Program-made: the position numbers and the translations under genes
Shown: positions 1-23,420 of the stretch, piece by piece
Layout: each line of letters opens with the position of its first letter
Position numbering within the stretch: position 1 is the stretch's first letter
Assembly: GCA_024704765.1 (NCBI GenBank)
Contig: JAKMXF010000347.1
Location: 62,001-126,000, forward strand
Origin: Oopsacas minuta
Lineage: Eukaryota; Animalia; Porifera
Direction: 5' to 3'
DNA length: 64,000 bases
Notes under the pieces: generated by a model
Told to the model about the DNA's origin: nothing
Database searches by the model: none
The model's input: the letters and a program-made list of their open reading frames with translations, nothing else

Positions 1-3000
1 GCTTTGGAAAAAGTTTTAGAAAAGAAATTTATTAAAGTGATTTCAGAAATGGAGAAGAATGTCGATAAGAGATTGAAATATTTAGAACTAGTTTTATTAG
101 AAGAGATAATCACATTATGTTCCCATAAGAAGGAAAGAACAGCTGGAGAGGAATTAGCTGAGAAATATGTGTGTGAGATTAAGCAGTGGCAACCTTTAAT
201 GGAGAGAGGATTGAGTATTAATCCAACTGATGAATTCGGTGATGAGCTCCAATTGACTATAAGGTAGTTGTATACATAATTAACCAGATTAGATGAATCT
301 GTATACATTTTATGTCTGTCTATTATTCCATGTATTAGGAGCGGAGCAAACTAAACACTATTACTTTAAGTTTAGCAATAAGCACGTTTTGTTGAATTTA
401 TTTTCGAACCTTTTGGTCTCAAAAATAGACATTCCTCGAAACACAATATACATATCATCAAGATGAAATCTTCGAACGGTCTAATTGGTTCCACGCCGAG
501 GGCGAATTAACAATATTAGCCATATTTCTCATCTTTTCTTTACAAAACCTGCATCTTATTGTTGGCAATCTGAACGCTAAACATAAACAATTTGGTTATG
601 TGCTCACCTCAGAGTGCCAACAATTGATTATTCTATTCTTTAGAAATAAATGGAATCGCATCCTGGCAGTTCAATTATTCATTTCTCACTGTACTCTCAA
701 AGTTGGATTCAATGTAACAGAATCTAGTATTAACAGATTATTTATGGTACTGTCATATAGCTGTAATAGATTTTTGAGGATACATTATTGTTCGATAATT
801 ATTTCTGTAATCTTTACTAGATCCTTGAAGAATGTCCAGATTTCACTTCAGCAAAAGTCATTAACAGTGTAATTAAGATTTTATCAAATTGTTTGAAGAA
901 AATGAGCAAAGCAATAGGGTAAGAATATTTGGATTATTATTCTATTCTCTGTTTACAAAATAATATTGAAATATCTTCACAACAGAGCTCCTGCACTCAA
1001 CAGACAAAGGTTCAAAGAGCAAGCCACTAGATTCTTCATTTGTATTCTAACCGATCTAACATTCAAATATTTAAAGATTGGAGATAGAAATGAAGATCTG
1101 ATATGTCTGTTAATGGGGTTTGTGACTTTAGACGAGGAGAGTATCAGTCAACTGGTTTCTGACCAAGAAAATATGAATATTTTTAAAAAAGATGGACTTG
1201 ATCCTTCTCCAGCTTTCAGAACTTTATTATTACAGCTATTAATCAGACATAGGTACGTATATACATTTCCTATATTGCAACTAGTGTTATACTTATTTGA
1301 AACTCAAAAATTGCACTAGTACCTATATAGAATGAATTATATAGGCGCAATGAGAGTCATTTTGATTGTGCACCGCGCCGTCGGCTCACCTTGATATTCG
1401 TGCGCCCACCCAGATTCTGCTCCACCATGATTAAAAAGTATATGGCGGGTGGACACGAGGTTATCTCCGCCCACCCTGACTCGGGAGCCTAGTTGTGCCA
1501 CTGACTTAAATTGCTCACTCGAAAATGTATATTTCTGTTCTCTGATTTATAACACTATTTTACTATCTTTAGGCCAGATGTATTTAGAGAAAATATTTCT
1601 GCATATTTGAGGAATACTGTATATAAATATCAGAATCATTTGATGCAGAAAGACTTGTATCTATTGATAGTTCAATCTATTGAGGTATCTTGAATTACTT
1701 ACATGTATATCTTCATTTGGAGAATTATCAATTCTACTCTCTTCTAAATAATAGCGCGCTTAGCTTGTTTGCGCTGCGTGGCTTGTGAACACTTGTATTT
1801 CTATGGAACTCGGCACTTTGTGCCTCCAATATTTATTAACAACAAATATTTAAATATCCACCTGCGCTTGCTAGGTCGCTGCAAGAAGGAATATACACAG
1901 TATTTTTTGGAAATTATAATTTTATTATCCATGATCCATCCGAATTCCATTTGATGGCATTTTGTGGTAATCCTGGAGCTGCTACGTGACTTTAGGTTAG
2001 GAATCTGGGCCATTTATGCCTCAGGCATTTAGAAATTCTAAAATATTTCGAAATTTCGACAATTTGGAATTTTGTACAATCATGATGACGTAATAATCCC
2101 ATAATTAATTTGCTTTTGGTCAAAATCATGATGTCAGGACAGTTAACCCATTGAGTGGTACCTGTGATTCAAATTTCTAACTTCTATAAAGTATATTGGC
2201 AGAGCTGTGGCAATTAATGTGATTTCTCGTCGAAGACTCGAATTTGTCCGAGCCAGGCCAAATACCACTGCATGCCAAAGACTGACCTCGAGGTTTTCCA
2301 GTTTCTTCAATCAATTCTGTATATACAAACATATATATACACATAGATTAATTGCGTTTTAATAATATAGACAAATGTAATTCGCTTGCTAGGTCGCTTT
2401 GCGACAGCTTAGTTTTACAAGTTAGATTAAGGATTAAACAGCTAAATTTTTTATTGCTATTTGTCGCTACGCGACCAGATATAATCGAACCTTACTTGGC
2501 ACTACGTGCCTCGAATAAAGAAATAACAAAATTTTTATAATACTATTATCAATGGTCCGTCCGAATTATTTTAATGACCTTCTGTGGTGATACCAGAGCC
2601 GGTAAGTCGCCTTTGGCAAGTAAACTTGGCACTTCGTGCCTTGGGGATTGAGAAATTCTCAAAAATTTTGAAATTTGGAATAGTTGTATCTTTTATACAT
2701 TTATGATGACGTAATCATTCAATAATGACTCAGCATTTAGTCAAAGTCATGATATCAGGACATTTCAGAAATTCATACCTATGACGAAATTATGACGTAA
2801 TTGTCACCTTTTTGGATTACCGAAAAATCACCCTAATGGACACTGCTCAGCCAATATACACGATAGAGATTTGAAATTTGAATCGCAGATAGTCAGCTAG
2901 ACCCAAAATACCCGTGTATGTAAAAAAGACGTTCTAGGAATTTTCCAGTTTCTTTAATCAATTCTGGACATAAAAGCATATATATATATATATATAGGAC

Positions 3001-6000
3001 ATTAGTCGATCACCAAATTTATGATCGGAGATCATGATTCCGATCCTTGTACCAAAAAGGATCGCGATCACAATCACGATCATTTTCCGATTACTGTGGC
3101 AGTCTGTCCGTCCGGAGTGGCCATGCGAATCTACCTGTCCGATTGCCATGAAAATTAGTGCATACATTTTTAGATACATTTTGGGGTATAGATTCATAAA
3201 TTTTCAAATTCTTCTGCTTAAAAACTAAAATTTTCGGGAAAATGATCGCGATCTTACACTCGATCACTGTTTATAAATGATCGGCGATCATCCTCCGATC
3301 GTGATCGAACGATACTAATGCCCTATGTATATGCACACACATACAGATTACAGTGGAGTCTCCCAAAACAGAAATTTCATATAAGGAACTTGAAGATGCG
3401 AATTCTGATTCAACGTATGTACTTTGTTACCCCATTGTATCCGTTGAAAGCAAGTCTCTACCAATATATATGTTTTGAGACTTTGAAATCATGAGCCATT
3501 AAAAGTAATAGACAAATTAGTCCATAACTGTTACATTGGCATTTGTATTGCATGATGAGATAGGCTTCAGGGGGTTATTGTGGGATTTTAGTAACCATAA
3601 TATAGGTTGATCATTTTTGGATGTATGTACTTATCAATAATCTATATTATTAAATCTCAATTGTTGTTTGTCCGTTGTCAAGGTAAGGATTTATGGTATG
3701 CAATTTTGAAATTGTTGCATAACTAGGTATTTATCAGGTTTATCAAGGAAGTAAATAGAATTCAATAAAACTTCACTAAATATATCAAACATGCTGAATC
3801 CGATTTTCACACTTTTGGATTAATCATATGTAAATTTATTGTTTTTATGAATATAAAGTAAACAAATTATCCAAATCTCAAAATATACGTACAGCCTTGC
3901 TCTAAACGGCTACACATGTACAATTTTTATTCAATAATTTATATGCCCTATACGTATATTTGTGAATTACATTGTTCTAAATATATCTATATTATAATAC
4001 TCAAAGGGGCAGCAATTTGGAGAATAATGGATACCACGAGGGACAATGAGCCGAGTTCATCGCGAAGTGAGAGCCAAAGGCTCGTCGTAATACGTCTTAA
4101 ATAAAGACGTTTTAAACAACTTAACTTTGAGTAAATTTATACTTCATTTTCTAAATTATTTCATTTAGGATTCTCTTCATCAAAGATTCAGACAAGATTC
4201 CCCTCCAAATCAACTCAAAAGTTTTCATTCTATATTTAACAATATAACCATCCGTTACCTTGCTGATACGCAGCTATCTTATGAATTGTTGGAAAAGATA
4301 GCTACCCTGAGGTTTATCTGTTTGCACATATCTAGGTGGATTATTGAATGTTTTGATCTTCTAAACACGCATCCAGACACACCTCACGACATCTTCAGAG
4401 ATGAACAGAGATTAATTACAATCTTCCAAGACATCTGTCTAATGGATGGCTTTGAAGATCTCCATACTCTTCTTTTGAAGAACATTTACCATCAGCTAGG
4501 AAGTGATACACTAAATATTCTTACTAAAAATCCTGCTTGCTCATGGGTTGTACCAAATCGTGTGAGGGAGAAGATTGCTGAGGTATTTATTTTACTATTT
4601 TCATATCTTGTAATACGAATTTTAGATGTTTTATGCAAGGTTTTACAAATTTCGATATCTATACTATATATTGGTAATATGATATGATCGATATCGATAA
4701 ATATCGCAAAAAATTTTTCTAAAGATCGAAATATCCGGAATTTTCAGATATTTCGATATTTCTCAACATTGTTCTCCTGATTTTGTGTCATCCCTGATTT
4801 TGTGTCATCCCGGATTGTGGAATTGGGAATTTGAAGCAAGCTACAACTGTTGGGTTGGGTGTGTTTTTTCGAATTCCTGAATAACGTTTTGGTGGTGGTG
4901 GCAATAATAGCCTCACCCATTTATTTTAAGGTATAAATGTTATGGGAGATGTTGGCGATTTACAAAATATGGCTTCAATTTTGCATTAGTATGGTTTAAT
5001 ACCGACTGGATGGCTTCTTCAAATTTATATCGTAGACACTCTTTGTTAATCAATTGCCCTCGAAACGTTCATTTGAACAAATTGTTACTGTTACGATGAA
5101 TGAGAACTAAGAAGATATGAATATTCAAATGAGACTCAATTTTTGGGGTGCTGCATTTGTCAAGCAAAATTCCTTGGATTTATCAGAATCTTTGCAGTAT
5201 ATATTTGTCAGACAGATATTTGCATTTGTCCGAATTCTCTCAGAGAAATGCATTTACAAACATCTGTTGCATATGTTGGCAAAGATTTTTACCAACAATC
5301 AGAAGTTAGTCAAACATCCGGATTTGATACATGTGACTGATAAATCCAAGTAATCTTACCTGCCAAATACACCGCCCAAAATTGAGTTCACTATCTCGTG
5401 TCTCATTTGAATATTCTTCAAATTGTATTTTCTCACTTCTCATTATCGGTAATGGTAACAATTTTTACCAATGAACGTTTTAGGGTAAAATGATAACAAA
5501 GAGTGTCGGGTCTGCGGTATAAGTTTGCAGAAGCCATATTGTTCATATTAAAACCATAATAATGCAAAATTGCCATATTTTGTACATCGCGAACATCTCC
5601 AATAACTAATATAGTAATACATTATATTTAAGAAAATATCCTATTCCATTAATTAAGCTAATTTCCTGATTATATTTATTTGCTGGGTTGTTTACTTGTT
5701 ATTTTAATTTAGTTACCCGCGATCATACCTGATTACTTCATAATATATGGAGAAGTTTATGTGAGAATTACAAGTGCAGTAGAACTAGTCAATTTGTTAC
5801 AGAAGAAAGACGCCCTGTTGCAATTCATCAATTCAGAAACTGTAAGTAATATTGTAATGATACAGTGGAACCTGCGTAAACCGACACTCGTTGGGACATG
5901 AAAATTAGGTTAGTTTGGAATTGCCAGATTATGAAGGTGAAATTTCACTGTGCCAACTATAGATTAATATAGTGGCCCAGTATTGAAATGGTTGCCTATA

Positions 6001-9000
6001 TTATTTTTTCTATTTTTCTCCGTAAGCACCCTGCAGCCAAAACTGGATAGAATTATGGTGATATATGGTGTGAGAACTATTGAAGATATTCGTTGGATGT
6101 GCTTCTCCCCTTTGCTAATCAATCGAAACCAAGTGCCACTATTTCACACTGGTCAAACTTTTGTCTGGCCTCTAGCAAAAAATTATGAAAGGAAAGGTGC
6201 CAAAAATTTCACACATTTCGAAAGAGAGAAAAATTCTACACCTTCGGACTCTTCAAGAATTTTTATATTAGTTATAGTTTTTTGATGAAAGTAAATGAAA
6301 AATATTTATTTTTTAGCACTATGTCATCGGTAATAATTCTATTGTTCTTAGATGTTGAATATTTATTAGCTAAACAATAGGTACTTCTAGTGGTGTATAT
6401 ACTACGGGCGTTCAATAAGTAGTCGTTATTCCAAATTTTGTAAGTCGGAATATTTCGACCCAGATCAAACTGAATTTTCTAATAACAATCCATCCATTGT
6501 GAATTCAATAATGCAAAGCGTTTTTGATTCAGACGTCTCGTTCTAATATTGTACTTATTTACATTTGACAGTTTATTATAGTAACATTTTAATGGCTTCA
6601 AAAAGTACAGATTTCATAATTGAGCAGAGAGCATATGTGAAGATCAGAACACTGCTCAAAGTTTCACCAACAGATGTCCACAAAGATTTAGAGGAAGTTT
6701 ATAAGGATACAGCACTTCCATATTCCACTGTTGTTGATTGGGCTAGACGCTTTCGTGAAGGTAGAGTGTCCATTGAAGATGGGGCAAGGATAGGGAGACC
6801 AGTTTCCAGCGCCAGTGACAAAAATATCCTTGAGGTATCCGCGTTACTTGAAGAAGACCCTCATACCACGCTTGTGGAGATAGCTGATGCGGTTGGGATC
6901 TCAACGGGAACTGCTCAAGCTATTGTACATGATAATATGAAATTCCGAAAGATATGTGATCGATGGGTACCGCATTTACTAACTCAGGCCCAGAAAGCAA
7001 AGAGGGTCCAATGAGCTTCTAAATTGCTCTCTGAGTTTGATCGAGCTGACTCCAGAAGGTTATTTGAGATAGTAACAGGTGACGAAACTTGGGTACGTTA
7101 TTCTGAGCCTTTATTAAAAGAAGCAAACAAAGTATGGGTGGCAAAAGGACAGGATCCACCAATGATCCCTCGACATGACTTTCGGACCCGAAGGTTATGT
7201 AGTGTATATTATTTGATTTTAATGGTCCAGTGTGTCAGATTTGTGTCTCCAAATACCAAACAATAACAGGCTCCTTCTACACCAATGAGTGTCTAACAGA
7301 GGTTGAAAATTCTACCAAAATCGACGGCCAAGGACTGTAACTCGTGGATTGCGAATATTGCATGATAACGCCCGACCGCACAAGACAAAGTTGGTTAGAG
7401 AAAAGTTAGAAGTTATGAAGATTGTGGAGCTAGATCACCCTCCCTACTCGCCAGATCTAACTCCCTGTGACTTTTGGTTGTTTCCAAAGCTAAAGAAACA
7501 TCTATCAGGCAGGAAATTCGAGAGTCGAGCTCAGATAGGATCGGCGATTTCCAGTATATGAAAGGTGTACCAACCGAAGACTACAAAAAAGTATTTTTCG
7601 ATTGGATAAAAAGGCTGAAATTGGTTTTACAGCACCAAGGGGAATACTTTGAGAAACTCCATCACTGACTATACATTATGCTAGAAAAATTTAGAATTAC
7701 AATGTGATAACGACTACTTATTGAACGCCCGTAGTAATATGCATTCATTGAATATCTAAATTTAACGGTAGCTTTAATTATTTCTATTATATTTATGAAT
7801 ATAATATTTTTCATATTAACTATGGATAATTTAAAAGACATGGATTTGCCCGATTATATAACCTTTGAATAATCGTAGAAGATTGTCCTAAACAGCAAAA
7901 GGGGTAATTCAATACGCTGATTCCGAATTTGACACTCTTGACCGATCAAATCTTCCCCAGTATTCCCTTCTATTAATATTATTTAGTCAACTGATAATTA
8001 TTGCAAACATTTTGAACATTTTATGTCCTAGATAATCATAGTATATTGTAAATATATTTTTTGATGGATTTGAAATACTCGCTCCGCTCGGAAAAAATAC
8101 AAAATTCCAACCTGTGCCGACAGCTTAGACTATTAATTAAATGTTTGAAAAGTGGCACTTAATTGGAGGCACTATGTGTAATGAGATTAAAACTAACCTC
8201 TCATGGTGCCTCCAATTACTATTTCAGATCAGAAACACTGCCGGATTATAGAGGTGTCGCTTTATGTAGGTACAATTAATGTCTGAACTATATTATGCTA
8301 TTTGTGTTTATTTTGTAGCCCGAAGCTAATATTACTGAATGTCTCGTATACTCAATGTTCCAGGAAGTTATCAAATTCTTCTTAATCCAACAAAATGATC
8401 AAGCTCAAACGCTTTTTGAGGTAACTGAATTATTTATCTAAGGATATAAAAATTACTAAACAAGATACTCTGGTTATACACATCTTGATCCAGCAAATAC
8501 TAACATTTAACTGATGATAATATTATATTTATAGAAATTCCTGACTCTAAAAGACTTTATGAATTCTGACCTGAAGGAAATCAACCCAGAACTAAACAAT
8601 TTAGTTATTCAGATAACAACTAACAACTTTGGAGATGGAAATCTACCTAATCTTAAACTTACAGATACTTCCAGTAATCATGAATTATTCCTAATCAGAC
8701 TAATATACCATGCAGCTGTTATGCTATCTTGTAAGAAATATCACAAGCTGTTCCTACCTATTGCTTTGATATACGAGAACCCTCAGACTCTACAGGACAG
8801 ATTATTTCCTACTATGATGGATGATCAGTTCAATTCCGCAAAAGCTGCAATTGGAGAATCAGGAAATTGGTATCAATGTCCTAACGGTCATCCTTACTTC
8901 ATTGGATATGTAAGATATAGATATTTTATATTTCTACAAAACCACAATCACCTTTAGTTTAGTGTCTAATGCAAGCTCATCGCCGGTTACTAGATCATGA

Positions 9001-12000
9001 TTTTGACTTTAGTCGAGAATTACGATTATGTAATTAATAATAGGGATGCCCTCTCCTTGTAACGCTACAAGGGGAGGGTTGGTATGCGAAGTATGACAGT
9101 CCAGTTCTTTTTGTATTTCAAACAGTTTGAGGACGGGGGTACATTACACTGTAGGGATCATCCATGCGGCCATATATGGACTTTAGGGGAACCAAATATG
9201 GCATGACAGGCCCACTTCTCACCATACTCACTGTACTAACCAATCTAAGTTGAGTCGTTCTAAACTTGATCAGCCGGACTGTCTCTTACGGCCATGTTTT
9301 TGGGAATTGCTCCTTTATATTAAACTCAGGTGCTTTTTGTGTAATAATCAGGGTGTATTCCTAAGTATAAAAGTAAGGGAACACTACAAACACTACCCCT
9401 TCCACTAAATTAGCGTCTCTTATGTGGTATAATCTACTCCTTTTGATGTTCTAGTTTTCCAGACTTGTCTACATTAACATCTATGAAATACAAGATATTT
9501 ACACTAAATGTGGAAAATTCAAAGTAGAAAAGTGGATGCCATCATATTTAATACTTTTTAGTTGACGCAAGCATTGCCACATGTAATCGATACTTACAGA
9601 AAAATATATTACTTGGGAATAAAATGTGACTATAATGTTGAACTCTAATTTCTAAACTGAATAATATAGTTAAATAATCCAAATATTCCATAAAGTAGCC
9701 TTCGCGTTCCTCTTCGTTCCCCCTGGAATTTAAAGTAAAGCAACTGCGTTCCCCCAATACACCCTGGTAAATAATCCTATACGTATTTCATTAGTGCGGA
9801 GAAGCTCAAGAAGAATTTACTTGTGCAGATTGTGGAAGAAGAGTTGGGGGAAATGATTATGTATTAGTAGCTCAGAATGTGTTGCTTGAGAAAGCTAAAG
9901 ACGAAACAAGAACAGGATACTTATTAGGAAACGCTAATGATGCTAGGAATGTATCAAGTGGGGAAAGGTTGTTAATTTACTATATTTCACAAGAAAATTT
10001 GTACTGTCAACTTCATAGCTCTACAATTTACAGTCAGACTCATAGTTACTTATGCAAAATCTGTACCCAACGGGACCAAAATATTTAGTGCATAACATAG
10101 CGGCATTATATTGAATTATTTAATACGAATCCCATGAGAAATAATTATAATTTATAACGATAACAGACTATTGACTTTATAATTATACGTATTATGGAGC
10201 ATGTAATTATATAAATATGTGTATATACATATAGGGAACTATCTCCTGCTTCAGTTAGGATTATTCGTATACTAATGGACATCTCCTTCATCTGGTCATC
10301 TTGTTCCAAACATCCTACAGACAGGAGTCCATTACTTCCTTCTCTCATAAAAGGAGGACTAGATGATCCTAGAGATCTTCCTAACTTCTTCTATCTACAT
10401 CTAGAGAGAGAGATTGAATATTTAACCAGACTGACAGGAAAGAACTTTGAGGAAGTTATCTTCTTTATCCATCTGATCATAAAATCTGTCATGGAAACAG
10501 TAGGAGAGCCATGTGAGTGGTTTAACAGTTCGTAGTATATTTGTAGTTATTATTCGATTATATTACAGGTGGAATTCCTACTGATTTAACACAGCGTGAA
10601 TTGAGAGAGCAGTGGGAGAGAGAATTTGATAAGAAATTCATTCAAACTATACTCAACTCTCTAAACACAGATGTACAAAGACAGATGGAACAGGTGCTGA
10701 GTGAAAAGGGGATAGCTAACAATCCTTTACTCAGGTTAATACAGAGATTAGTATATTAGTTGAATTATCTATGAATTGTCCTAAATCTTTAGAATGGTAT
10801 ACGAGAGAGATGAATCAGAACCAAACAACCCGTTACCTCATCTATGGCGTTACAGAACTATCGTGAGTCTGGAGCATTTCTCTCAGAGCTTCAGTACAGC
10901 TAATTTAAATGCCAAAAACAAGTGTCCGTTAGTAGACAAGTTCCTGAAAGAAGAAAACAAATTATTTGTGACTCGTTACTTACCAGACATTGTACAGCTA
11001 CAGAGACGAGTAGGAGATAAGTTCCTACACAGATTGGATAGGAGAGAAGCTGCTAATACTTCTATTAAAGATTTCTTAAATAGAATGAAAACTGGTAAAC
11101 ATGGGTCCAACTGAATGGTGGAAAACATGGAAAAGTGATGGGGAATGAATGAATGATGCATTTATACGAAAATTCAGAAATTCCACCATTTTCCACAATT
11201 CAGTCAGACCCTTAAATATAATGTCTATATTTACATAATTTAATTGATTCTGTGTTAATTTCGGCAATTAAATCTCATTTTAGAGAACAAACATGAATCA
11301 GAAGAATTAGCTAGTTTAGTGGAGAGTCTTGCTACAGCATGGAGTATGATTGGAGAAGATGTGAAGAAGAATGGACGTCTCACATTTGACGAAGCTCTAG
11401 AACAACAAGAAATAACTCCTGCTAAATCTCTAGCTTACCTGCTCCCTTCCTCAACAGGAAAGGGAGTGCTGATCACCTCACTCACTGACTATCTAGTGCT
11501 GATACACAACTCATTTGTACACGTCTACAGAGACAGAGTGAAGGGGTATGTATCATTCTATTAAATGATATGTCTACAGACATGTCTCATATTATTCTCA
11601 TTGTATTAGGTCTCGTAGTAACAAGATACCACTCCGTGAATTGAATATAAGTCATGTGATTGTTTACGAGGAAGACTTGCAGCCTCTACTACTGTCACAT
11701 GCTCATTACTCACTAGCTCTCGGACAAGGAAGTCAAGTGACTTATGATTTTGAGGGAGTAGAACAGCAATTAATGGAACAATTCATTCAGAACAAACCTC
11801 TTATTCAAGCAGAACATCTCCGCTTTGAATATATTCGTGAGGCTTACAACCTGGGTGTGTTTGAGCAGGTGCGACACAAAGTTCAACAGGTCAGTGTATT
11901 TTATAATATGACTTAGTTCTATATTGTGTTTGTTCGAAAACTATTTGCAATTCCATAAATCTAGCACTAATCCCATTGATTACACTTTGTAATTGTATTT

Positions 12001-13726
12001 ACTTCACAACTATAACTAACTATCTTTCCCAGACTGAAGTGAAGGAGATAGTATGGATAGCTATAAGAGAAGATTTAGACTCTCTAGAAGCAATTAGTGA
12101 TGTCCTCCTGTTGTTAGATGTAGTGATTGGATTCTTATCTTCAGTAGGAGGAGATCCAGAACAGAAATTGTCAATCTACCTTTATGAAGTTCTAAAGTAC
12201 ACTCATGATTCTCATGGATCTGGTCCTCTACAGAGTAGAAGAGTATGTGATTTCTTCATATTATTGTTCCTATTTGACAATACACGGATATGTATTTACA
12301 ACTTGACTTTCTTTAGGCAGAGACAGTATTGTATCTGAAACATATAATCAGCTTCTGGACTCTGCTGTCAATAGAGAAAGCTCGTAAGCTCTCTCTCCTT
12401 GGACAGGTATGTATATTATGATTCAGTAGCTAGTCAGTAAAATTCTAGTATTCAACATTTTGTTTGTTCAGATATATTTCCCACAATTCGTATACTTGAT
12501 GGGACCATTACTTCACATTTGATATTTCATTATAGATTCCTTTCTCATCCTTGAGAGATGAATTTCAGGAAGTTGTGAGTAAGGAGGAAGCACAACAAAT
12601 TACGCGAACCTGTGATAAATTCCCAGTGGCAAAGATATTGATGTATCTCCACGAATTTATTCTATTCTTTCTACGAGAGAGAGATGTTGATGAAAAGAAT
12701 TTTGGGTGAGTTATGCAATACTTTTATCAAGAATATTTACTGAAACTTTAATATCCATATTTCATGGATCTGGATACTATTTACAATCAACAGCGAGATT
12801 TAAAATTACAATTTTTCTCTTTCTATTATTCTAAAATTTTCTATGTTAAAACATTGGATAATGTCTAATTATTTTATTGACTGTTATTTGATGGAATAAG
12901 AGAAGTAAAAATTGTAATATATGAATCAGGTTAAATTAGAAAATCGACCTGCAGGTGAATTTCAAACTGTCGGTAGACCAGTCGGGCAAAATCTCGACTG
13001 GTTCCATCTCTGAACCCAGTCAATCGAAGTAGGATTTTCCGGAACCTCACTTCATTTAGCTAGCCGTGACTCGATCTAGGAGCATCTCTCTTCATAAATA
13101 TACTCTATTATTGGTTAGTGCGCTTCGCTTGCTAGGTCGCTACGCGACTGCTTAGTGCCTCAAGTTAGCTTAAGTATTTAACAGCTAATTTTCTTAGTAA
13201 TTTGAAGATACCCCTGTAAGCCAAAATCAGCCATGGGGGGTCTTCCAATTTCTTCAATCAATTCTGGGCATACAAACAAATCGATATACACATATATACA
13301 TCTATATTATTCCAACGCAATTAATCTGTGTAAATATCAAGGTTGCAATCATTCAATATTCGGTATTCGGTTAGACTACTATTCATGAATACTGATATTC
13401 GGTTCGAGCGGTTTCAACCTTTGTTATACCCGAGTTGTAATTACATAGAATCCTATGTAATCAGAAATTTTAGTTAGTTATATGCCGAAAAACGTTATAT
13501 CCGAGTTCTACTGAATATAGATTAATTGCGTATTTATTATTGTTGATTCTCTGATAGACTGAAGGATAGTATAAAGATATACGCTGATGACAATGATTGG
13601 AAACTCCCTGAAGGATTCAATCACTTCCCTGAAGTAATAAAGCTATCACAGTGTGCATCTGCTTGGGCTGTATTAGCTCAGGAAGAGCATAGAGTTTCTA
13701 ACCCTCTAGCTAACCATAACGAATAA
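1..13726 (+). CDS. RNF213: RNF213/mysterin-like E3 ligase, 3' part (5' end outside window). Exons: 1-263, 644-746, 821-918, 986-1252, 1573-1684, 4169-4582, 5713-5841, 8319-8420, 8535-8909, 9795-9967, 10235-10512, 10569-10734, 10793-11094, 11284-11545, 11610-11889, 12033-12242, 12317-12406, 12536-12705, 13558-13726
   Basis: Hand-spliced with GT-AG introns. All 18 junction phases are consistent, giving 3963 nt (1320 aa plus stop). Motifs are collinear with the human RNF213 C-terminal region: KWNRILAVQLFISH, DPSPAFRTLLLQLL, LYLLIVQSIE/DS, LFPTMMDD, RZ finger WYQCPNGHPYFIGYCG..CADC, REQWEREF, RYLPDIVQLQR, LLPSSTGKG, VIGFLSSVGGDP, LKHIISFW, YLHEFI, FPEVIKLSQCASAW. Confidence 0.93.
1740..3345 (+). 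mobile_element. Two tandem non-autonomous Helentron/HINE (DINE-1-like) elements (about 1740-2365 and 2370-3345)
   Basis: Both copies share CGCTTGCTAGGTCGCT near the 5' end, blocks such as ATGATGACGTAAT, and CCAGTTTCTT(C/T)AATCAATTCTG followed by a (TA/CA)n microsatellite and an AGATTA tail. A third copy lies at about 13100-13300. The family assignment is by structural resemblance only. Confidence 0.5.
2995..3325. mobile_element. hAT-like MITE nested in the TA microsatellite of the preceding element
   Basis: 12-bp TIR TAGGACATTAGT ... ACTAATGCCCTA (1 mismatch), with dense internal GATC/CGATC repeats typical of hAT subterminal regions. The TSD is obscured by (TA)n. Confidence 0.6.
3640..4090 (+). 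mobile_element. Helitron-like non-autonomous fragments
   Basis: Two ATCTATATTAT(T/A)A 5'-type starts (about 3640 and 3986) and a 3' GAGCC-AAA-GGCTC hairpin near 4070-4082. Confidence 0.35.
4945..5601. mobile_element. Foldback-type MITE with about 210-bp imperfect terminal inverted repeats (RNF213 intron 6)
   Basis: 4945-5160 (GGGAGATGTTGGCGATTTACAAAATATGGC...) is the imperfect reverse complement of 5363-5601 (...GCCATATTTTGTACATCGCGAACATCTCC). Confidence 0.75.
6402..7734 (+). mobile_element. Full-length (1333 bp) mariner DNA transposon in RNF213 intron 7
   Basis: Perfect 28-bp ITRs (CTACGGGCGTTCAATAAGTAGTCGTTAT and its reverse complement), flanked by TA at 6400-6401 and 7735-7736. Confidence 0.95.
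6592..7668 (+). pseudogene. Inactivated DD34D mariner transposase
   Basis: HTH N-terminus, WVPHLL, TGDETW, HDNARPH and YSPDLTPCD motifs, with 34 residues between the 2nd and 3rd Asp. In-frame TGA at 7012-7014 and frameshifts near 7190, 7310 and 7550. Confidence 0.93.
13338..13423. mobile_element. About 86-bp hAT MITE, copy of the 22606 family
   Basis: CAAGGTTG...CAACCTTTG ends; core ATTCATGAATACTGATATTCGGTTCGAGCGGTTTCAACC shared with 22606-22692 and, inverted and partial, 34748-34840. Confidence 0.65.
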
Positions 13727-16250
13727 CAACATGTAATGTCTGATAGAGAATTATTTGAAAAAACAATAATATTATTTATATCTAACACTATAAAAAATAT
13801 ATTTGTATTTCATAAGAACTAATCTTAATTTTCTTTTGGATGTTTATTGCTTTTGATAGATACGTTTTACCAGTGTTTGTATTTATTAATTGTTTTATAA
13901 TATACTTTGCTTTCAGATCACTTGGCTATGCTCGGTTATGTTTGTAAGAAAAATTGAACTGTGTTCTGTGTATTATGTGCTGGCATATATTTTCTGGATA
14001 ACTATAAATAACTTAGCCCACGAAATGCGATTCAAATTTGTGTATGCAACAAAGTTTCATCGTGTTTATGTTAAATTTCCATATTTTCTAATTCTAATTC
14101 AATTTGTTGCATCGTGGATGGTAAGAGTTGGATACAACAATGCTGCAAGAATCTTGTTGCATGGGAATAGGAACATGTAGAATTTTATGCAACAATGTTA
14201 TCTGCAAACATTGTGTATATACAGTGGAATCTCCCAAAACTGACACTTCGAGAATCGCACAAGGTCCTACAACGGACGGACAGATACCATGTCCCAATGT
14301 GCCCGTTATTCGGAGACTTCACTGTATGTATGTTGCCTTTTTGCATGCATCAAAGTTGGATCATGTATAATAAACTAATATAAGATCATGAGTAATTTAC
14401 CAGATAAGATTATATTCAAAATAAGCTTGAGTACTGAACTGGACATATTCCATGATGTTATGTGAGGTTATTATATTAATAGAATGCACATTACGAGTTA
14501 CGACGAATTAATTCATATTTTTTTTGTTTATTTTTTGGTGATTTAGGGTATATGAGGATTCTGTTTTGAAACTAGCAAGTAACGCCGGGCACCATTGAGA
14601 AAATTATCAATTATTATTCATAAATTATTCAGGACAATAAAGAATTTATTGACCTTATAAGGCAATGGAAGGGTTGAAACTAGATTTCACAGTGTTATTC
14701 CATTTCTGTGTAATTCGGTGGAATTTCCATATATTCGTCAGCTTAAAATTTTAAAGTTTATTCTCACTCTACAGTCGTATATGAATCTTCTGATATTTTG
14801 AGCTACCCATCATGCAACCTTTGATTATCCAACACTGAACATTTCCTGTTCTTCTATTAACAAGCATCATACTAGCTCTATTTACGATAACAACAATCTA
14901 TCTCAATATTCTTAATTCTCTTGTACTATCTTGTAAGTTGAGACCTTTCTTCCATCTGAACGCCTTCAAGTTTACACAATTCTCTACGACAAGTAATTAA
15001 TGTGATTCCTATCAATAATAGCTTCGTGACCGAATATGCCTTTATATGTCGGAATTATCCATTCAATGCCTCTTTAACTAATAGTCTAACTTCTCCAAAG
15101 AATTAATTCAATAAGTGGAATTTGTGAAACCTTACCTTTACTAGTCATTGCATATATACAAGTCATTGTATAAATTTTAACAGCTGTATAGCTGTAGTTA
15201 TAATTATTATTGGGAATTTTAAGGAATTTTCATCACAAATAGTTTCAATGGTAAAGTTTATATTCAGTAGACTCCGCTTAACAGGGACACATCGGGAACA
15301 GGTTATTTGATCCGATTGAGCGGAATAAAGGTGTTTGCCTAATTAAATGAAATAATTCAATTGAGCTATTTGTTTGGTTCTGTTTCTGGCTAAGTGACCC
15401 GATTAACCGGTGGCTCTATTATGCGGACTCTTAACTACTTATTCAATGTTAGGTAATATTTGACACATTTCGCACTCTGATATCAAATATATTATTTTAT
15501 TTTAATTATATAATTATATTTATAATTCATATTCTATAATCAATTATATTGAGAGTGTAAGAGTAACACAATTGATGCTCTATTCCATTCTACTATCGGT
15601 TCCCAACCATTTTCACCATCCTTTTCTATTTTTTCACTCGCATAGTCCTCCAAAGCAAGTTAACTACTCTATTGTTGAGTAATACCCCATCGAAAGTACA
15701 AACTTTGAAATTTTCGGATCGTTTAGTGTCTTCCGTGAATCAAAGTAGATAGCAATCACAGGTAAATACAATTAGATTTGTCCATATTATTCCCAAACTT
15801 TGTCCATGTGCCAAGCTTATTAGAATTTCCTAAATCAAGAGAAATTGGTATTAATTGAGTTACTAATTATCTTTACCAGAGTTTGTCCCGATTAACCGAA
15901 AATATTTATTATTAACCTGAATGTAGATGATTCCGTTCCTGGAGATTTGTCCCAATTAAGTGGAGATAACTGTATATTCATGTGTGGTAGTTAGAATTAA
16001 TGTGAAAAACCTGTGGTAGATACCTTTGATGTAACCGCAATAAAATCAATTAATATTCATAATGAATTGGAGAATATTTGTCTATTGTAATATGAATATT
16101 GATTGTCGTGCAAACACACCACAAATACATGTAATAATTATGCTCTTTACATTGTTTACAGCCTGCTGGGATGCTTACATACATCATAAAACCATCTACC
16201 TGCTTGAGAACTATATTATTTATTTATATTATTAGTTGCATAACTGTTTC

Positions 16251-18491
16251 ATGGCCTCGTACAAGAAGGAGGACGCATACAGAGTACTACACTTGCTAGA
16301 GGAGTACAGGAACTCCCTCCCAGTTAGTGAGGCAAATGATGAGGTAGCTCTTAGGCTAGCTCTTGACAATCTTATTGCCGCGATCAGAGCACGGCTTTTC
16401 ACAGCACTCAGCGAGCTTTTAGAATTCTACAACGAGTGTTTGTTAGATCCCTCCAAAGCTAGCGAAGAGAAATCAAAATACAGTTCATCTCTAGCTCTGC
16501 ACTGGCAGCAGGGTAGTCTACCTCCTGTTAGCCCTCTGCACAAACCGATAGAGGCTAGCATGGGGTACTACGACTTCGATATTGTCATAAATAAGGGGGA
16601 CTCAGAATTGGGTATCAGTCTATCAGCTGGCATAGGACAAGAACAGGGGGTATTAATTTCTAATATTGCTCCAGGCAGTGCAGCTGATAGGTTTGAAGAT
16701 ATCAGAATAGGAGACCGTATCTTGGAAGTAAACAGAGTATCATTTCTTACAATTTCACAACAGACAGCAGTCAATACACTAAACAGCATAACTGGTGATA
16801 TAGAGTTAGTGCTGAGGAGAAATCTCATAACTAGAGAAGGAGAGAGAAAGATAACTGTAGTGCCATTGAACAAACTGAACGGTAGCCTCGGCTTCACTAT
16901 AAAAGGAGGTACAGATGCTCAGCTGATTAGCGAACATGACGGTATATTCATCTCTAAAGTTTTCAAGAAGGGAGCGGCTGAGAAGACAGGACAGCTGTCA
17001 CCTGGTGACAGGATTATCTCTGTGAATGGGAATAACATTGAACACGTGACACATGATGAAGCAGTGAGAGTACTGAGTTCTTCGGGTGAGAATATTCTTA
17101 TTAAAATCGAGAAGGGAGTATTCTCTTTGGATAATAATGACGACACGTGTTCAGTTCATGAGACTACTCTGGAGAGAGGTGAGCACGGATACGGTATTAA
17201 AATTATTGGTAGGGAAACGCCTTCACTCGCCGTGTATGTGTCTCAGGTTACACAAGGAGGACCAGCTGATATCAGTCAGAAGATATCCAAAGGTGACCGT
17301 ATCTTAGAAGTGAATGGACAGGATGTACGACAAGTAACCCATGAAGTAGTAGCCAGTATATTCCGCTCCTCTCAGCACCATGTACACATCAAGGTACGGC
17401 ATGCTGAAGAGGGTTGGGAGCAGGTTATGGCAGCTAACAATGGTAGTTCTGATCCTAACGCACCTCTCAATATTCTATATCAGGACACATTCTTCCTCAG
17501 AGCCTGGTTCCATTTCGATCCTAGTGTTGAGCCTGATATCCCGGACGCAGGTCTTATGTTTGGACAGAATAGCATTCTTTGTGTGGTTAATTCTACTAAT
17601 TCAGACTGGTGGCAGGCGTGTATAGTGGATGACTTTGGTAAGTTCAGCCCCTGTGGTTTGATACCCAGTGAAAAGTACCAATTGAAGCGTGAGCATCTGA
17701 AGAACAGATCTGTTCACTTCCCTGATCAGGAGTCCTCTGACGTAGATAATACAGAGGTTAATAAGACGAAGAAGAAATTATTTCAAAAGATATCTAAAAA
17801 GGTAAAACGCACGAAGCACTCTAGCAAAGCAAGTAGTGACTCAGAAACAGTTGGCACTACTCCTTTCTATACTCACGTAGAGAAGCATGAAATTGAGGTG
17901 AAGAGACCTGTTATCCTGCTTGGACCTCTCAAAGATCATCTTAACGACATGTTAGTGCAGGAGTACTCCTCTGCTTATGCAGGGTGTGTACTCCACACCT
18001 CCAGGCCTCGGAGAGAGAATGAAGAACACGGAGTAGATTACTACTTCGTGTCTAGTGAGATAATGGAGCAGTATGTAGCTGATGACAGCTTTATAGAAGC
18101 AGGGCATTTTAATCAGAATCTTTACGGTACTACAGCACGAGCTGTTAGAGATGTATTAGATGCACAGAGACACTGTATACTCAGTGTAAGTCCTCAGAGT
18201 ATTCATAGACTTGAACAGGCAGGGCTGAGCCCTATCGTGATCCTTCTCTACCCTACCTCCCCTTCCGCACTTCTAGAGTTACCAGAGTATCAACACACCC
18301 ACCACATACAACATGATGACTATGAGAAGCAGATAGAACTTGCTGACAACCTTACCCATGATATTGGAGAACAGCTGACTGGAATTGCAAAAGGAGATAA
18401 CATAGAAGAACTACTCTACTCAGTAACTAATATTATCAATGCTCACAGCTACAAAATAGAATGGATTCCTGTCAGAATTGAACTACAATGA
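16251..18491 (+). CDS. DLG: Discs large MAGUK (L27-PDZ-PDZ-PDZ-SH3-GK), single coding exon
   Basis: ATG at 16251. MASYKKEDAYRVLHLLEEYR resembles the DLG1 L27 N-terminus. Three PDZ repeats (ELGISL, SLGFTIKGG, GYGIKIIG), SH3 (LRAWFHFDP...DWWQA...GLIPS) and GK (RPVILLGPLKD, HTSRPRRENEEHGVDYYFV, FIEAGHFNQNLYGT). Confidence 0.95.
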   Translation: MASYKKEDAYRVLHLLEEYRNSLPVSEANDEVALRLALDNLIAAIRARLFTALSELLEFYNECLLDPSKASEEKSKYSSSLALHWQQGSLPPVSPLHKPIEASMGYYDFDIVINKGDSELGISLSAGIGQEQGVLISNIAPGSAADRFEDIRIGDRILEVNRVSFLTISQQTAVNTLNSITGDIELVLRRNLITREGERKITVVPLNKLNGSLGFTIKGGTDAQLISEHDGIFISKVFKKGAAEKTGQLSPGDRIISVNGNNIEHVTHDEAVRVLSSSGENILIKIEKGVFSLDNNDDTCSVHETTLERGEHGYGIKIIGRETPSLAVYVSQVTQGGPADISQKISKGDRILEVNGQDVRQVTHEVVASIFRSSQHHVHIKVRHAEEGWEQVMAANNGSSDPNAPLNILYQDTFFLRAWFHFDPSVEPDIPDAGLMFGQNSILCVVNSTNSDWWQACIVDDFGKFSPCGLIPSEKYQLKREHLKNRSVHFPDQESSDVDNTEVNKTKKKLFQKISKKVKRTKHSSKASSDSETVGTTPFYTHVEKHEIEVKRPVILLGPLKDHLNDMLVQEYSSAYAGCVLHTSRPRRENEEHGVDYYFVSSEIMEQYVADDSFIEAGHFNQNLYGTTARAVRDVLDAQRHCILSVSPQSIHRLEQAGLSPIVILLYPTSPSALLELPEYQHTHHIQHDDYEKQIELADNLTHDIGEQLTGIAKGDNIEELLYSVTNIINAHSYKIEWIPVRIELQ

Positions 18492-18654
18492 TATCCCTCT
18501 TGTAATCCGTACAATTTTTGGTACCTTTTGTTATTTTATTGAATACTCATTTCTAACTTATTTATAATTCAATATTTGATGTTCAACTTATTCAATAAAC
18601 AACCTCGTATCTTATTCAATATTTTACTTACAAGGAGGGGAGAAATGCTGTTAA

Positions 18655-18740
18655 CTGTTAACTGCAAATCTTTCCTCGCAAAAAAACCCATTAACTTTTA
18701 CAGATGGGATTTTGAGTGAGGAAAGGTTTGTAGTTAACAG
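18655..18740 (+). repeat. 86-nt inverted repeat/hairpin between DLG and GCAT
   Basis: 37-bp arms (18655-18691 and 18704-18740) with 31/37 Watson-Crick pairs plus 3 G-U pairs on the + strand, and a 12-nt loop. Confidence 0.85.
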
Positions 18741-18814
18741 CAAACCTTTTATGTTTTGTTAATATGTGCTAATATTTGGAGATGATTCTTATTATGCACA
18801 CAGTTTGTAATAGG

Positions 18815-20074: not shown

Positions 20075-20429
20075 GCGACATACACGTTTAGTTTTAATGT
20101 TAGATAATTTTATTTGTATTTCCGTATATTCTTCACTTATTTACTACATCAGTAGCCATTACATATGACCCGTAACTTCAAGATTGTATCCAGATTCTGA
20201 ATCCGGGGGAGCTCTGAGTAAGCCTAACTGAATCCAGTGTGTGGAGAGAGTTTCAACTGCTTAATAATTAATTAGGTCAACTCCCGTCATTATATATCAT
20301 CAACTGAGTACTAATCTCACTAACATTAAATGACTATACTTCATGTCTGATTCAAATAACCACTAAATTACTACAACCTATCACCTAATAGTTATATAGT
20401 TAGATGACACAACTGGTATAAGCAAGAGA

Positions 20430-22394: not shown

Positions 22395-22605
22395 AATGAC
22401 ATCCTGTATACTATTTTTACATCTACCAACAAGCAGTATAGATATATGAATTTTTAACTCTCCTATACTGATAATATACCTATCACTTATGTACAACATA
22501 CATATTACTTATTAACATATGTTCATTGATGTAATTCTCATTATTTATATATTTTACGATTTTTTGAAAATACAATCCTGAACTAAGACCAAAATGGCTA
22601 ATTTG

Positions 22606-22692
22606 CAGGGTTGTTACCGAATATTATCAGTAATATTCGGTTAGGCTACTATTCATGAATACTGATATTCGGTTCGAGCGGTTTCAACCAAG
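22606..22692. mobile_element. 87-bp hAT MITE with perfect 8-bp target-site duplication
   Basis: Ends CAGGGTTG...CAACCAAG; CTAATTTG at 22598-22605 and 22693-22700. Confidence 0.85.
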
Positions 22693-23099
22693 CTAATTTG
22701 ATAATAAATAAATCAATTATTTGCCATTTAATTTGTCACGTATTTGCAAGAAATGTGGAGTTGTCTCGTCATAAATATGTACCACGTCATGACATCTTAT
22801 ATCTATTCTAAAATTATTCGACTATGTATATGTAAAGAATATCGATATACTCCTTGGAAGAAACCATTATTCTGTAACTGTTGAATTTCTATATGCGATA
22901 GAATCGTAAGAGGAATTCAAATACTTATACGTAATGACGAATAGTTGTATCTAAATGGTGTAATACCTTGCACACATTTGTAAATATAATTTCTCCAGTT
23001 TACCTTATCTGATCTTTGATTATGTAAGATACAGTAAGAACTTTGCTTTGTACATGTACATACATACGATGTAATGCAAAATTGCAATCTTTGTGCATA

Positions 23100-23420
23100 T
23101 CCTATAGGGAGGTGTCCTAATGGCATGGACGATGTGCGATGTCCGTCCGTCCGTGCGGCCTTCCGAAATCTAGCAGTCGAATTAACATAAAAATTGGCAG
23201 TTGCAGCTCGGGTATGAATTGTTTCTAAAGTAAATATTTCACACCTTTCTATGTAAAATACAAACCCCCCAAGCTAGATTTGTTGTCAGGGGTAATACGG
23301 TGCGTAGAGTCCGATTTCGAGAATTTCAGAGTCTGAAATTTAAATTCACAGATTTATCATATGAATAATCATATTTTACACCTTTTTGCATAATTTTCAA
23401 AATCATGCTAGAGGTTTCGC
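23100..23420 (+). repeat. DINE-1-like interspersed repeat; related copies at about 26480-26690 and 26910-26960
   Basis: (GTCC)n microsatellite at about 23142-23153. Blocks TTCACACCT...GAGTCCGATTT...CAGATTTATCATATGA(A/T)TAATCATATTTT(C)ACACCTTTTTGCATA recur at about 26480-26650 and 26916-26960. Confidence 0.55.

What the first reader, a model, noticed from the sequence alone, without database searches (positions are those of the whole stretch)
8868..9860. RZ finger keeps all zinc ligands and the nucleophile Cys but has Tyr in place of the catalytic His
Seen: WYQ-C-PNG-H-PYFIGY-C-GEAQEEFT-C-AD-C-GRRVGGND-Y. The spacing matches human C4505/H4509/C4516/C4525/C4528 exactly, but the position 21 residues after the catalytic Cys (human H4537) is TAT Tyr at 9858-9860, one base from CAT His. 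The residue before the Cys is Tyr rather than Glu. Known: C4516 and H4537 are the proposed active-site pair for RNF213 transthiolating E3 activity. Inference: with no RING either, this copy may be a catalytically impaired or decoy paralogue, or may discharge ubiquitin onto a different acceptor.
Basis: partly seen in the sequence, partly recalled or inferred. Interest (0 to 1): 0.75.

Follow-up and report, generated by a model that had tools for sequence, protein, structure and literature searches.

The report
Sponge RNF213 RZ finger with Cys/Tyr
A glass-sponge copy of the giant immune ubiquitin ligase RNF213 really has tyrosine where human RNF213 has its catalytic histidine, but the gene is intact, expressed and under selection, and the same His-to-Tyr swap recurs in about one in six related zinc fingers across animals, so it looks like a maintained natural variant rather than an error or a dead copy.

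Summary
Observation confirmed. An RZ-type zinc finger (Pfam PF20173, both halves above the curated cut-off) is split by a phase-0 intron (exon 8535-8909, exon 9795-9967). Spacing of the four zinc ligands, the nucleophile Cys and the general-base position matches human RNF213 exactly. That position is TAT (Tyr) at 9858-9860.

It is not an assembly error. An RNA-like contig is identical over 9795-9968 and spliced at the predicted junction. An orthologue on a metagenome contig has TAC. Three paralogues in this genome also have Tyr.

It is not a pseudogene. The same gene has an uninterrupted 3969-codon exon upstream for the N-arm and AAA core, and dN/dS against the orthologue is 0.135.

Tyr is the one recurrent alternative to His. 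Of 140 representative RZ fingers, 116 have His, 23 Tyr and 1 Ser. Tyr arose separately in hemichordates, bivalves and sponges.

The 'impaired or decoy' reading is therefore only partly supported. The His matters in mouse RNF213 and human ZNFX1, but the evolutionary evidence points to a maintained Cys/Tyr variant of untested chemistry.

The 'Tyr before the Cys' is doubtful, because the RNA contig and the orthologue both have Asp there. No RING was found. The genome is probably Oopsacas minuta. The scan had already noted RING-less RNF213 copies elsewhere in this genome.

The parts
8535..8909 (+). Exon A of the RNF213 homologue: end of the E3 module plus the first half of the RZ finger (W-Y-Q-C-P-N-G-H-P-Y-F-I-G-Y at 8868-8909)
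   Evidence: Acceptor AG at 8533-8534 and donor GT at 8910. Pfam PF20173 positions 4-23, 29.7 bits. tblastn to Glandiceps RNF213-like P0007 residues 4073-4183. RNA-like depth in run X1 starts at about 8534.
8877..8891 (+). Zinc ligands 1 and 2: Cys codon TGT 8877-8879 and His codon CAT 8889-8891 (human C4505 and H4509)
   Evidence: Read directly from the sequence. Spacing is identical to the human residues named.
8907..8909 (+). Codon before the nucleophile Cys: TAT (Tyr) in the assembly, doubtful
   Evidence: The X1 spliced contig reads TGAT instead of ATAT at 8906-8909, giving Gly-Asp. Orthologue L027 has GAC, Asp. 0 of 139 RZ representatives have Tyr here. Window 8695-8914 is 100% identical to scaffold C162, which continues into a different intron and exon.
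8910..9794 (+). Phase-0 intron (885 nt, GT..AG) that splits the RZ finger just before the nucleophile Cys codon
   Evidence: Sequence. The junction is seen in the X1 contig. All nine RNF213-type RZ loci of this genome have an intron at the same position. The orthologue's intron is 239 nt.
9795..9967 (+). Exon B: nucleophile Cys (9795-9797), zinc ligands 3 and 4 (9822-9824 and 9831-9833), Tyr at the general-base position, and the start of the C-terminal domain
   Evidence: Pfam PF20173 positions 25-52, 28.6 bits. The X1 contig is identical over 9795-9968. tblastn to P0007 residues 4180-4243. The donor lies at 9968-9969 and the next exon starts at 10235.
9858..9860 (+). TAT, Tyr, at the position of human H4537, mouse H4483 and ZNFX1 H1881
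   Evidence: Codons at this position in relatives: orthologue TAC; paralogues C347:178k TAC, C162 TAC, C299 TAT; C144 GAA, Glu.
10235..12250 (+). Further exons of the C-terminal (E2-docking) domain of the same gene; exon borders not all defined
   Evidence: tblastn to P0007 residues 4243-4734, and to P0008, P0096 and P0132. The orthologue contig aligns at 10242-10521 and 10563-10708.
1..8534 (+). Earlier small exons of the E3 module of the same gene (for example about 984-1253 and 4169-4687), with no RING finger detectable. The giant N-arm and AAA-core exon lies upstream of the window at contig C347:46873-58779.
   Evidence: tblastn. 3969-codon open frame. No RING in any open stretch of 35 aa or more between the AAA core and the RZ finger, by motif listing and by Pfam.

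Best explanation
This is the RZ-finger active site of an intact, expressed RNF213 (mysterin) paralogue of a glass sponge, probably Oopsacas minuta. It has a natural Cys/Tyr pair in place of the Cys/His pair of the studied mammalian enzymes.

Shown:
- The zinc site (C-H-C-C), the non-ligand nucleophile Cys and the downstream E2-docking domain are all kept.
- The Tyr is inherited, shared by a sub-clade of paralogues and by an orthologue.
- The gene evolves under purifying selection.
- Tyr is the only residue that repeatedly replaces His at this site across animals.

Inferred: the finger still accepts ubiquitin from an E2 on its Cys. The Tyr hydroxyl takes over, or changes, the second step, which is positioning and activating the acceptor nucleophile. 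The likely result is a slower or differently selective discharge, not a dead enzyme.
For: - Motif and spacing.
- Same gene as a dynein-like AAA core: a 3969-codon uninterrupted open frame, 39% identical over 1858 aa to a hemichordate RNF213-like protein.
- Homology to the C-terminal domain after the finger.
- Expression and correct splicing, with exon B identical to the window.
- Orthologue L027: dN/dS 0.135 over 258 codons and 0.127 over the RZ core, nucleophile Cys kept, Tyr codon TAC against TAT.
- In this genome Tyr also occurs in the copies at C347:178k, C299 and C162, using both Tyr codons.
- Of 140 representative RZ second halves that keep the nucleophile Cys and both zinc Cys, 116 have His, 23 Tyr (20 with canonical spacing) and 1 Ser. 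The other one-step neighbours of His (Asn, Asp, Gln, Arg, Leu, Pro) are absent.
- Named Tyr-type proteins come from Saccoglossus, Glandiceps, Pecten, Pinctada, two Mytilus species and Oscarella.
- On a 775-column tree Tyr sits in three separate well-supported places. The sponge copies form their own clade with His-type copies branching first. Together this implies at least four origins.
- Raw covariation: Met or Trp four residues after the nucleophile Cys in 79 of 120 His-type fingers and 0 of 27 Tyr-type fingers.
Against: - No Tyr-type RZ finger has been assayed.
- Replacing the His is damaging where it was tested. Mouse RNF213 H4483A has more than 10-fold lower autoubiquitination (PMC12075652). 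ZNFX1 H1881N loses the RZ-dependent activity (bioRxiv 10.1101/2025.09.05.674436).
- The gene also lacks a detectable RING.
- It belongs to a family with clearly degenerate relatives: C162 has Phe for the nucleophile Cys and C144 has Glu for the Tyr.
- Purifying selection on the finger could reflect a binding role rather than catalysis.
- The search profile contained 4 Tyr rows out of 9, which may slightly inflate the Tyr share.
- The Met/Trp covariation could not be tested free of relatedness, because only one starred independent pair was available.
Confidence: 0.6

Rival explanations
1. Catalytically impaired or decoy paralogue. Without the general-base His and without a RING, the protein can no longer pass ubiquitin to substrates. 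It persists as a regulator, a scaffold in RNF213 oligomers, or bait for pathogen effectors.
For: - His-to-Ala and His-to-Asn mutants of the mammalian enzymes are strongly impaired.
- No RING was found.
- The family is in rapid turnover and includes degenerate copies that are still transcribed. The C162 copy, with Phe for the nucleophile Cys, is seen spliced in RNA.
Against: - A dead finger should lose constraint, yet the RZ core has dN/dS 0.127 and keeps the nucleophile Cys in the window copy, its orthologue, C347:178k, C299 and C144.
- Across 140 representatives the non-His residues are almost only Tyr (23 Tyr, 1 Ser), arising at least four times. That pattern fits a chemically useful replacement, not random loss.
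- Tyr-type proteins of hemichordates still have a RING, so Tyr is not tied to general decay of the E3 module.
Confidence: 0.27
2. Assembly or sequencing error: the true base at 9858 is C, giving His.
For: A single T/C difference separates TAT from CAT. The neighbouring exon A shows signs of allele or paralogue mixing in the assembly.
Against: - The RNA-like contig is identical over 9795-9968.
- The orthologue from an unrelated metagenome sample has TAC.
- Three paralogues have TAC or TAT at the same codon.
- No alternative letter at 9858 appears in the listed differences of four runs. That list was truncated, so this point is weak on its own.
Confidence: 0.01
3. Decaying pseudogene in a birth-and-death RNF213 array; the Tyr is one of many neutral changes.
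For: - At least nine RNF213-type RZ loci are in the genome, two of them on this contig.
- Mariner-like transposase remnants lie inside an intron of this gene at 6565-7561.
Against: - An uninterrupted 3969-codon exon.
- All examined exons are open and have canonical splice sites.
- The gene is expressed and spliced.
- dN/dS is 0.135 at dS 0.74 against the orthologue.
Confidence: 0.03

Closest known systems
RZ finger of human and mouse RNF213 (C4505/H4509/C4525/C4528 zinc site; C4516 nucleophile; H4537 general base; mouse C4462/H4483)
   Same: Same Pfam family. Identical spacing of all six landmark positions. The same gene context: a dynein-like AAA core upstream and an E2-docking C-terminal domain downstream.
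   Different: Tyr replaces the general-base His. No RING is detectable in the E3 module. The residue four positions after the nucleophile Cys is Gln, not the Met or Trp usual in His-type fingers. The finger is split by an intron. It is one of at least nine paralogues in a sponge.
RZ finger of human ZNFX1 (C1860 nucleophile, H1881 general base)
   Same: The same fold family and catalytic layout. This genome also has a ZNFX1-like single-exon gene with a complete His-type RZ finger (contig C302).
   Different: [quoted passage not shown] The window gene is an RNF213-type AAA protein. In ZNFX1 the His is kept, and H1881N is inactive in the RZ-dependent assay.
Tyr-type RNF213-like proteins already in public databases: Saccoglossus kowalevskii XP_006816196, Glandiceps talaboti XP_077981890, Pecten maximus XP_033741837, Pinctada imbricata KAK3098458, Mytilus coruscus CAC5415238, Mytilus galloprovincialis VDI52044, Oscarella pearsei EP00118_P024112
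   Same: RZ finger with all zinc ligands, the nucleophile Cys, and Tyr exactly at the His position. The bivalve proteins also lack a Pfam-detectable RING.
   Different: They are separate origins of the Tyr on the trees. The hemichordate proteins keep a RING. None is annotated or discussed as an active-site variant in the papers searched. The Oscarella model has a C-x-C instead of C-x-x-C.
Cys/His pairs of other transthiolating zinc-domain E3 ligases (RBR RING2, RCR ligase MYCBP2)
   Same: The RNF213 papers draw the same mechanistic analogy: a Cys takes ubiquitin from the E2 and a nearby free His deprotonates the acceptor.
   Different: The folds are unrelated. No natural Cys/Tyr version of these is known to me (from memory, not searched).

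Membership tests
RZ-type zinc finger (Pfam PF20173) | Match to the family model above the curated gathering score | tested here: met
   Exon A scores 29.7 bits and exon B 28.6 bits against a cut-off of 27. Together they cover model positions 4-23 and 25-52 of 54. The same result came from the six-frame search of the genome.
RZ-type zinc finger (Pfam PF20173) | C-H-C-C zinc ligands with the spacing C-x3-H-x15-C-x2-C | tested here: met
   Cys 8877-8879, His 8889-8891, Cys 9822-9824 and Cys 9831-9833 have the same offsets as human C4505/H4509/C4525/C4528.
RZ-type zinc finger as a transthiolating E3 active site | A non-ligand nucleophile Cys 11 residues after the first zinc Cys | tested here: met
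   TGC at 9795-9797. It is kept in the orthologue and in four of five close paralogues.
RZ-type zinc finger as a transthiolating E3 active site | General-base His 21 residues after the nucleophile Cys (human H4537) | tested here: not met
   TAT, Tyr, at 9858-9860, with no other His within 35 residues. Among representatives, 116 have His, 23 Tyr and 1 Ser, so the His is not universal in the family.
RZ-type zinc finger as a transthiolating E3 active site | Ubiquitin thioester formation and discharge | not testable with these tools
   Needs protein biochemistry.
RNF213 (mysterin) family | Giant protein with a dynein-like six-module AAA core upstream of the E3 module | tested here: met
   Contig C347:50251-58689 aligns to P0007 residues 667-3241 and P0151 residues 1420-4104 in one frame. 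The open frame is 3969 codons.
RNF213 (mysterin) family | C3HC4 RING finger in the E3 module, about 490 residues before the RZ finger | tested here: not met
   Pfam finds the RING at that distance in P0007, P0091, P0116, P0019, P0044, P0096 and P0132. It finds none in any open stretch of 35 aa or more between the AAA core and the RZ finger here. A short RING exon split by introns is not excluded. RING-less relatives exist: P0009, P0037, P0140 and P0151.
RNF213 (mysterin) family | C-terminal (E2-docking) domain after the RZ finger | tested here: met
   tblastn of four RNF213 proteins matches 10233-12212 in order.

The most novel reading that the evidence does not exclude
Cys/Tyr RZ fingers are a functionally distinct, selectively maintained catalytic subclass of RZ-type E3 ligases. 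They make up about 15% of representatives and arose at least four times (sponges, bivalves, hemichordates, Oscarella). A co-adapted catalytic loop, with no Met or Trp four residues after the Cys, accompanies the Tyr. The Tyr changes which acceptor nucleophile is ubiquitylated, or how fast. This would diversify expanded RNF213 immune arrays in invertebrates.
Probability: 0.3. Interest if true: 0.65.

Novelty: new variant of a known kind. Interest (0 to 1): 0.42.

Why it matters
RNF213 and ZNFX1 are the only human RZ-finger ligases. Both act in cell-autonomous immunity, and their Cys/His dyad was defined only recently. Nature has repeatedly replaced the His with Tyr, and almost only Tyr, while keeping the nucleophile Cys under selection.

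This gives a ready-made experiment on the second catalytic step: H4537Y or H1881Y swaps in the mammalian enzymes, and Tyr-to-His or Tyr-to-Phe changes in a natural Tyr-type finger. It also raises the question whether acceptor chemistry (ester against isopeptide) can be tuned.

For this genome it shows that the copy is a working member of an expanded sponge RNF213 family, not an assembly fault. If Tyr-type fingers prove inactive, the finding becomes a catalogue of conserved pseudo-enzymes, which is less interesting.

Tried and rejected
- **Assembly error at 9858:** rejected.
- **Pseudogene:** rejected.
- **A link between the Tyr and loss of the RING:** rejected. Tyr-type hemichordate proteins keep the RING, and some His-type proteins (P0140, P0151) lack it.
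- **A mistake of mine, corrected:** I first took the 5678-aa Pecten protein P0151 for a Tyr-type protein because it shares a cluster with P0009. Reading its finger showed His. The Tyr-type Pecten protein is P0009.
- **Tree on the 51 usable columns of exon B:** too poorly resolved to count origins. It was replaced by a 775-column tree of long proteins and an exon-A tree.
- **Relatedness-corrected test of the Met/Trp covariation:** only one supported independent pair, so no test was possible.
- **Pattern search of the genome for an exon A ending GGTGAT:** no exact copy found, so the Asp form seen in RNA is not in the assembly.
- **Literature search for invertebrate RNF213 expansions or Tyr variants of the RZ finger:** nothing relevant found.
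- **Not done:** the costly word-index protein search was not used. No structure was predicted, because the tool returns no coordinates to measure a Cys-Tyr distance, and because the finger would have had to be joined across the intron.
Full report
**What is in the sequence**

Window 8868-9860 holds an RZ-type zinc finger split over two exons on the + strand.
- Exon A (8535-8909; acceptor AG at 8533-8534, donor GT at 8910) ends with W-Y-Q-C-P-N-G-H-P-Y-F-I-G-Y.
- A phase-0 intron of 885 nt follows (8910-9794).
- Exon B (9795-9967) opens with C-G-E-A-Q-E-E-F-T-C-A-D-C-G-R-R-V-G-G-N-D-Y.

Each half on its own passes Pfam's gathering score of 27 bits for ZnF_RZ-type (PF20173): 29.7 and 28.6 bits. 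Offsets from the first Cys are +4 His, +11 Cys, +20 Cys, +23 Cys and +32 Tyr. These are the offsets of human C4505, H4509, C4516, C4525, C4528 and H4537.

**What the literature says**

Four residues (C4505, H4509, C4525, C4528) bind the metal. C4516 (mouse C4462) is the nucleophile found by activity-based probe cross-linking. H4537 (mouse H4483) is placed next to it in models and proposed as general base (bioRxiv 10.1101/2024.09.24.614677; bioRxiv 10.1101/2021.05.10.443411). Mouse H4483A lowers autoubiquitination more than 10-fold (PMC12075652). In ZNFX1, H1881N abolishes the RZ-dependent activity (bioRxiv 10.1101/2025.09.05.674436). No paper that I found mentions a Tyr at this site.

**Is the base real?**

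Four public runs of one sample hold parts of 8400-10400. Run X1 has an exon-like depth profile: thousands over the exons and near zero over the introns. It contains a 208-nt contig at depth about 800. That contig consists of 30 nt of exon A, four further letters, and then 9795-9968 without a single difference. This confirms both the splice junction and the TAT in a transcript.

Those runs may come from the assembly's own sample, so I looked for independent evidence. The best hit of a profile search, P0001, lies on a 1287-bp metagenome contig (ENA ERZ23489589, locus L027). L027 carries four consecutive exons of the orthologue from a related organism, 77-91% identical in DNA, with a 239-nt intron at the same place. 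Its finger keeps every landmark and has TAC at the Tyr codon. An assembly error is excluded.

**What gene is it?**

The window is contig C347:62001-126000 of a 61,460,524-base assembly in 365 contigs. These figures match the Oopsacas minuta v1 genome (61.46 Mb, 365 scaffolds) listed in Table 1 of PMC10282587. The organism is therefore most probably this glass sponge.

Upstream on the same strand lies one uninterrupted open frame of 3969 codons (C347:46873-58779). It aligns in a single frame to the N-arm and AAA core of RNF213-like proteins, with 39% identity over 1858 aa to a Glandiceps protein. Downstream of the finger, exons up to about 12250 align in order to the C-terminal domain.

Between the AAA core and the finger, no open stretch of 35 aa or more shows a RING, either by motif or by Pfam. 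In seven comparison proteins Pfam finds the RING about 490 residues before the finger. So this is an RNF213 homologue without a detectable RING, in agreement with other notes of the scan on this genome.

**Selection**

Against L027, summed over the four exons (258 codons), dS is 0.74 and dN is 0.099, giving dN/dS 0.135. For the 36 codons of the finger core the ratio is 0.127. The pooled values were obtained by adding up the per-exon codons inside a script.

**Paralogues in this genome**

A six-frame search with PF20173 finds ten RZ loci. One is a ZNFX1-like single-exon gene on C302 with a complete His-type finger. The other nine are RNF213-type and share the intron just before the nucleophile Cys.

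| Residue at the base position | Copies |
|---|---|
| His | C66, C49, C177:591k, C177:545k (one residue shorter) |
| Tyr | the window copy, C347:178k (107 kb downstream on the same contig), C299, C162 |
| Glu | C144 |

Both Tyr codons are used. On a tree of exon A, the eight RNF213-type copies tested (C162 was left out) form one clade (SH-aLRT 91). The His-type copies C66 and C177:545k branch first. The Tyr therefore arose inside the sponge family.

**How common is Tyr elsewhere?**

A profile of the nine exon-B translations was searched against 1.84 billion representative proteins. It gave 222 hits at E up to 0.001. Of the best 150, 140 keep the nucleophile Cys and both zinc Cys. Among these, 116 have His, 23 have Tyr and 1 has Ser. 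Twenty of the Tyr cases have fully canonical spacing. The profile itself held four Tyr rows, which may favour Tyr hits slightly.

Named Tyr-type proteins come from the hemichordates Saccoglossus and Glandiceps, the bivalves Pecten, Pinctada and two Mytilus species, and the sponge Oscarella. A tree of 37 long proteins (775 columns, with the site itself masked) puts Tyr in three separate well-supported places and Ser in a fourth. With the sponge clade this makes at least four origins.

His codons are one step from Asn, Asp, Gln, Arg, Leu and Pro as well as Tyr, yet only Tyr recurs. That pattern argues for a replacement that keeps some function. Hemichordate Tyr-type proteins keep their RING, while the bivalve ones and some His-type proteins lack it. 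The two traits are therefore not coupled.

**A possible co-adaptation**

Four residues after the nucleophile Cys, His-type fingers have Met or Trp in 79 of 120 cases and Tyr-type fingers in 0 of 27 (Fisher p 3e-11). Within this genome the His-type copies have Trp, Trp, Trp and Arg there. The Tyr-type copies have Gln, Val, Val and Ser.

This is a raw count. The relatedness-aware test had only one supported pair and says nothing. I report the covariation as a lead only.

**The codon before the Cys**

The assembly has TAT (8907-8909). The only spliced contig that carries this exon B reads GGTGAT, giving Gly-Asp. The orthologue has Asp. None of 139 representatives has Tyr there; the position is Glu, Asp, Asn or Gln in nearly all.

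Window 8695-8914 is 100% identical to scaffold C162. In C162 this tract begins right after an N and then runs into a different intron and an exon B in which the nucleophile Cys is Phe. RNA contigs show that Tyr-ending exon A spliced to the Phe-type exon B. No exon A ending GGTGAT exists in the assembly.

The window may therefore be a mosaic of alleles or paralogues at the end of exon A, or the site may be polymorphic. I could not settle this. It does not affect exon B or the Tyr at 9858-9860.

**Mechanism**

Shown:
- an intact zinc site
- an intact nucleophile Cys
- an intact E2-docking domain by homology
- expression
- purifying selection
- recurrence of Tyr

Inferred: the finger still receives ubiquitin on its Cys. 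In related Cys/His ligases the His serves the second step, not the first. The Tyr then alters or slows the transfer to the acceptor, perhaps shifting which nucleophile is used.

I give 0.6 to the reading that this is a maintained, still catalytic Cys/Tyr variant. I give 0.27 to the impaired or decoy reading. Its main support is that Ala and Asn replacements of the His are strongly damaging in the mammalian enzymes. Error and pseudogene together get under 0.05.

**Novelty and score**

The gene is an ordinary member of the RNF213 family, and Tyr-type relatives already sit unremarked in public databases. What seems undescribed is that the general-base His has a recurrent, conserved Tyr alternative. 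I rate this a new variant of a known kind. Interest is moderate (0.42): it is a clear, cheap hypothesis for RNF213 and ZNFX1 enzymology, but its functional meaning is untested.

Nothing here is a toxin or a virus. Spliced pieces were searched exon by exon, by reference only.

Noticed in passing
G000:C162:7959-10432 (loci L012, L018, L023): A close relative of the neighbouring paralogue has Phe (TTT) in place of the nucleophile Cys and keeps Tyr at the base position. Its exon A is 100% identical to window 8695-8914 and begins right after an N in the scaffold. An RNA contig shows this exon A spliced to the Phe-type exon B, so a nucleophile-less copy is transcribed.
   Followed up: partly
G000:C144:787041-788514 (loci L009, L019): Another RNF213-type paralogue has Glu (GAA) at the general-base position. 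Its first RZ half reads W-H-R-C-P-K-G-H. On the exon-A tree its nearest relative is the C347:178k Tyr-type copy, with the window copy next.
   Followed up: partly
window 8906-8909: The assembly reads ATAT (Gly-Tyr). The spliced RNA-like contig that carries this exon B reads TGAT (Gly-Asp). The orthologue has Asp, and no RZ representative has Tyr here. This is a possible allele, gene-conversion tract or assembly mosaic.
   Followed up: partly
window 9632-10078: Runs X2 and X4 hold a contig about 94% identical to the window. It has a dense patch of changes and a 1-nt gap at 9801-9817, the loop right after the nucleophile Cys. It may be a divergent haplotype or an unassembled paralogue. The difference list was truncated, so its codon at 9858 is unknown.
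   Followed up: no
window 6565-7561: Mariner/Tc1-like transposase remnants in three frames, including a helix-turn-helix part and the D-D-D/E region with the 'HDNARPH' motif. They lie inside an intron of the RNF213 gene.
   Followed up: no
RZ fingers of the 150 best representative hits: Met or Trp four residues after the nucleophile Cys occurs in 79 of 120 His-type fingers and in 0 of 27 Tyr-type fingers. This is a raw association, not corrected for relatedness.
   Followed up: partly
G000:C302:284717-284851 (locus L001): A ZNFX1-like gene has a complete His-type RZ finger in a single 2058-codon open frame (74 bits to PF20173). The sponge therefore has both kinds of RZ protein.
   Followed up: no
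G000:C49:49422-49757 and G000:C177:591529-591863: Two nearly identical His-type RNF213 RZ loci lie on different contigs. Their exon B differs at three residues. They are either a recent duplicate or two haplotigs of one locus.
   Followed up: no
window 16236-24844 and 54531-59498: Several large intronless open frames flank the RNF213 gene: a 751-aa MAGUK-like protein with PDZ, SH3 and guanylate-kinase parts, a 432-aa aminotransferase-like protein, 654-aa and 379-aa proteins, and a 1655-aa HEAT-like protein on the minus strand. This fits the many single-exon genes reported for glass sponges.
   Followed up: no
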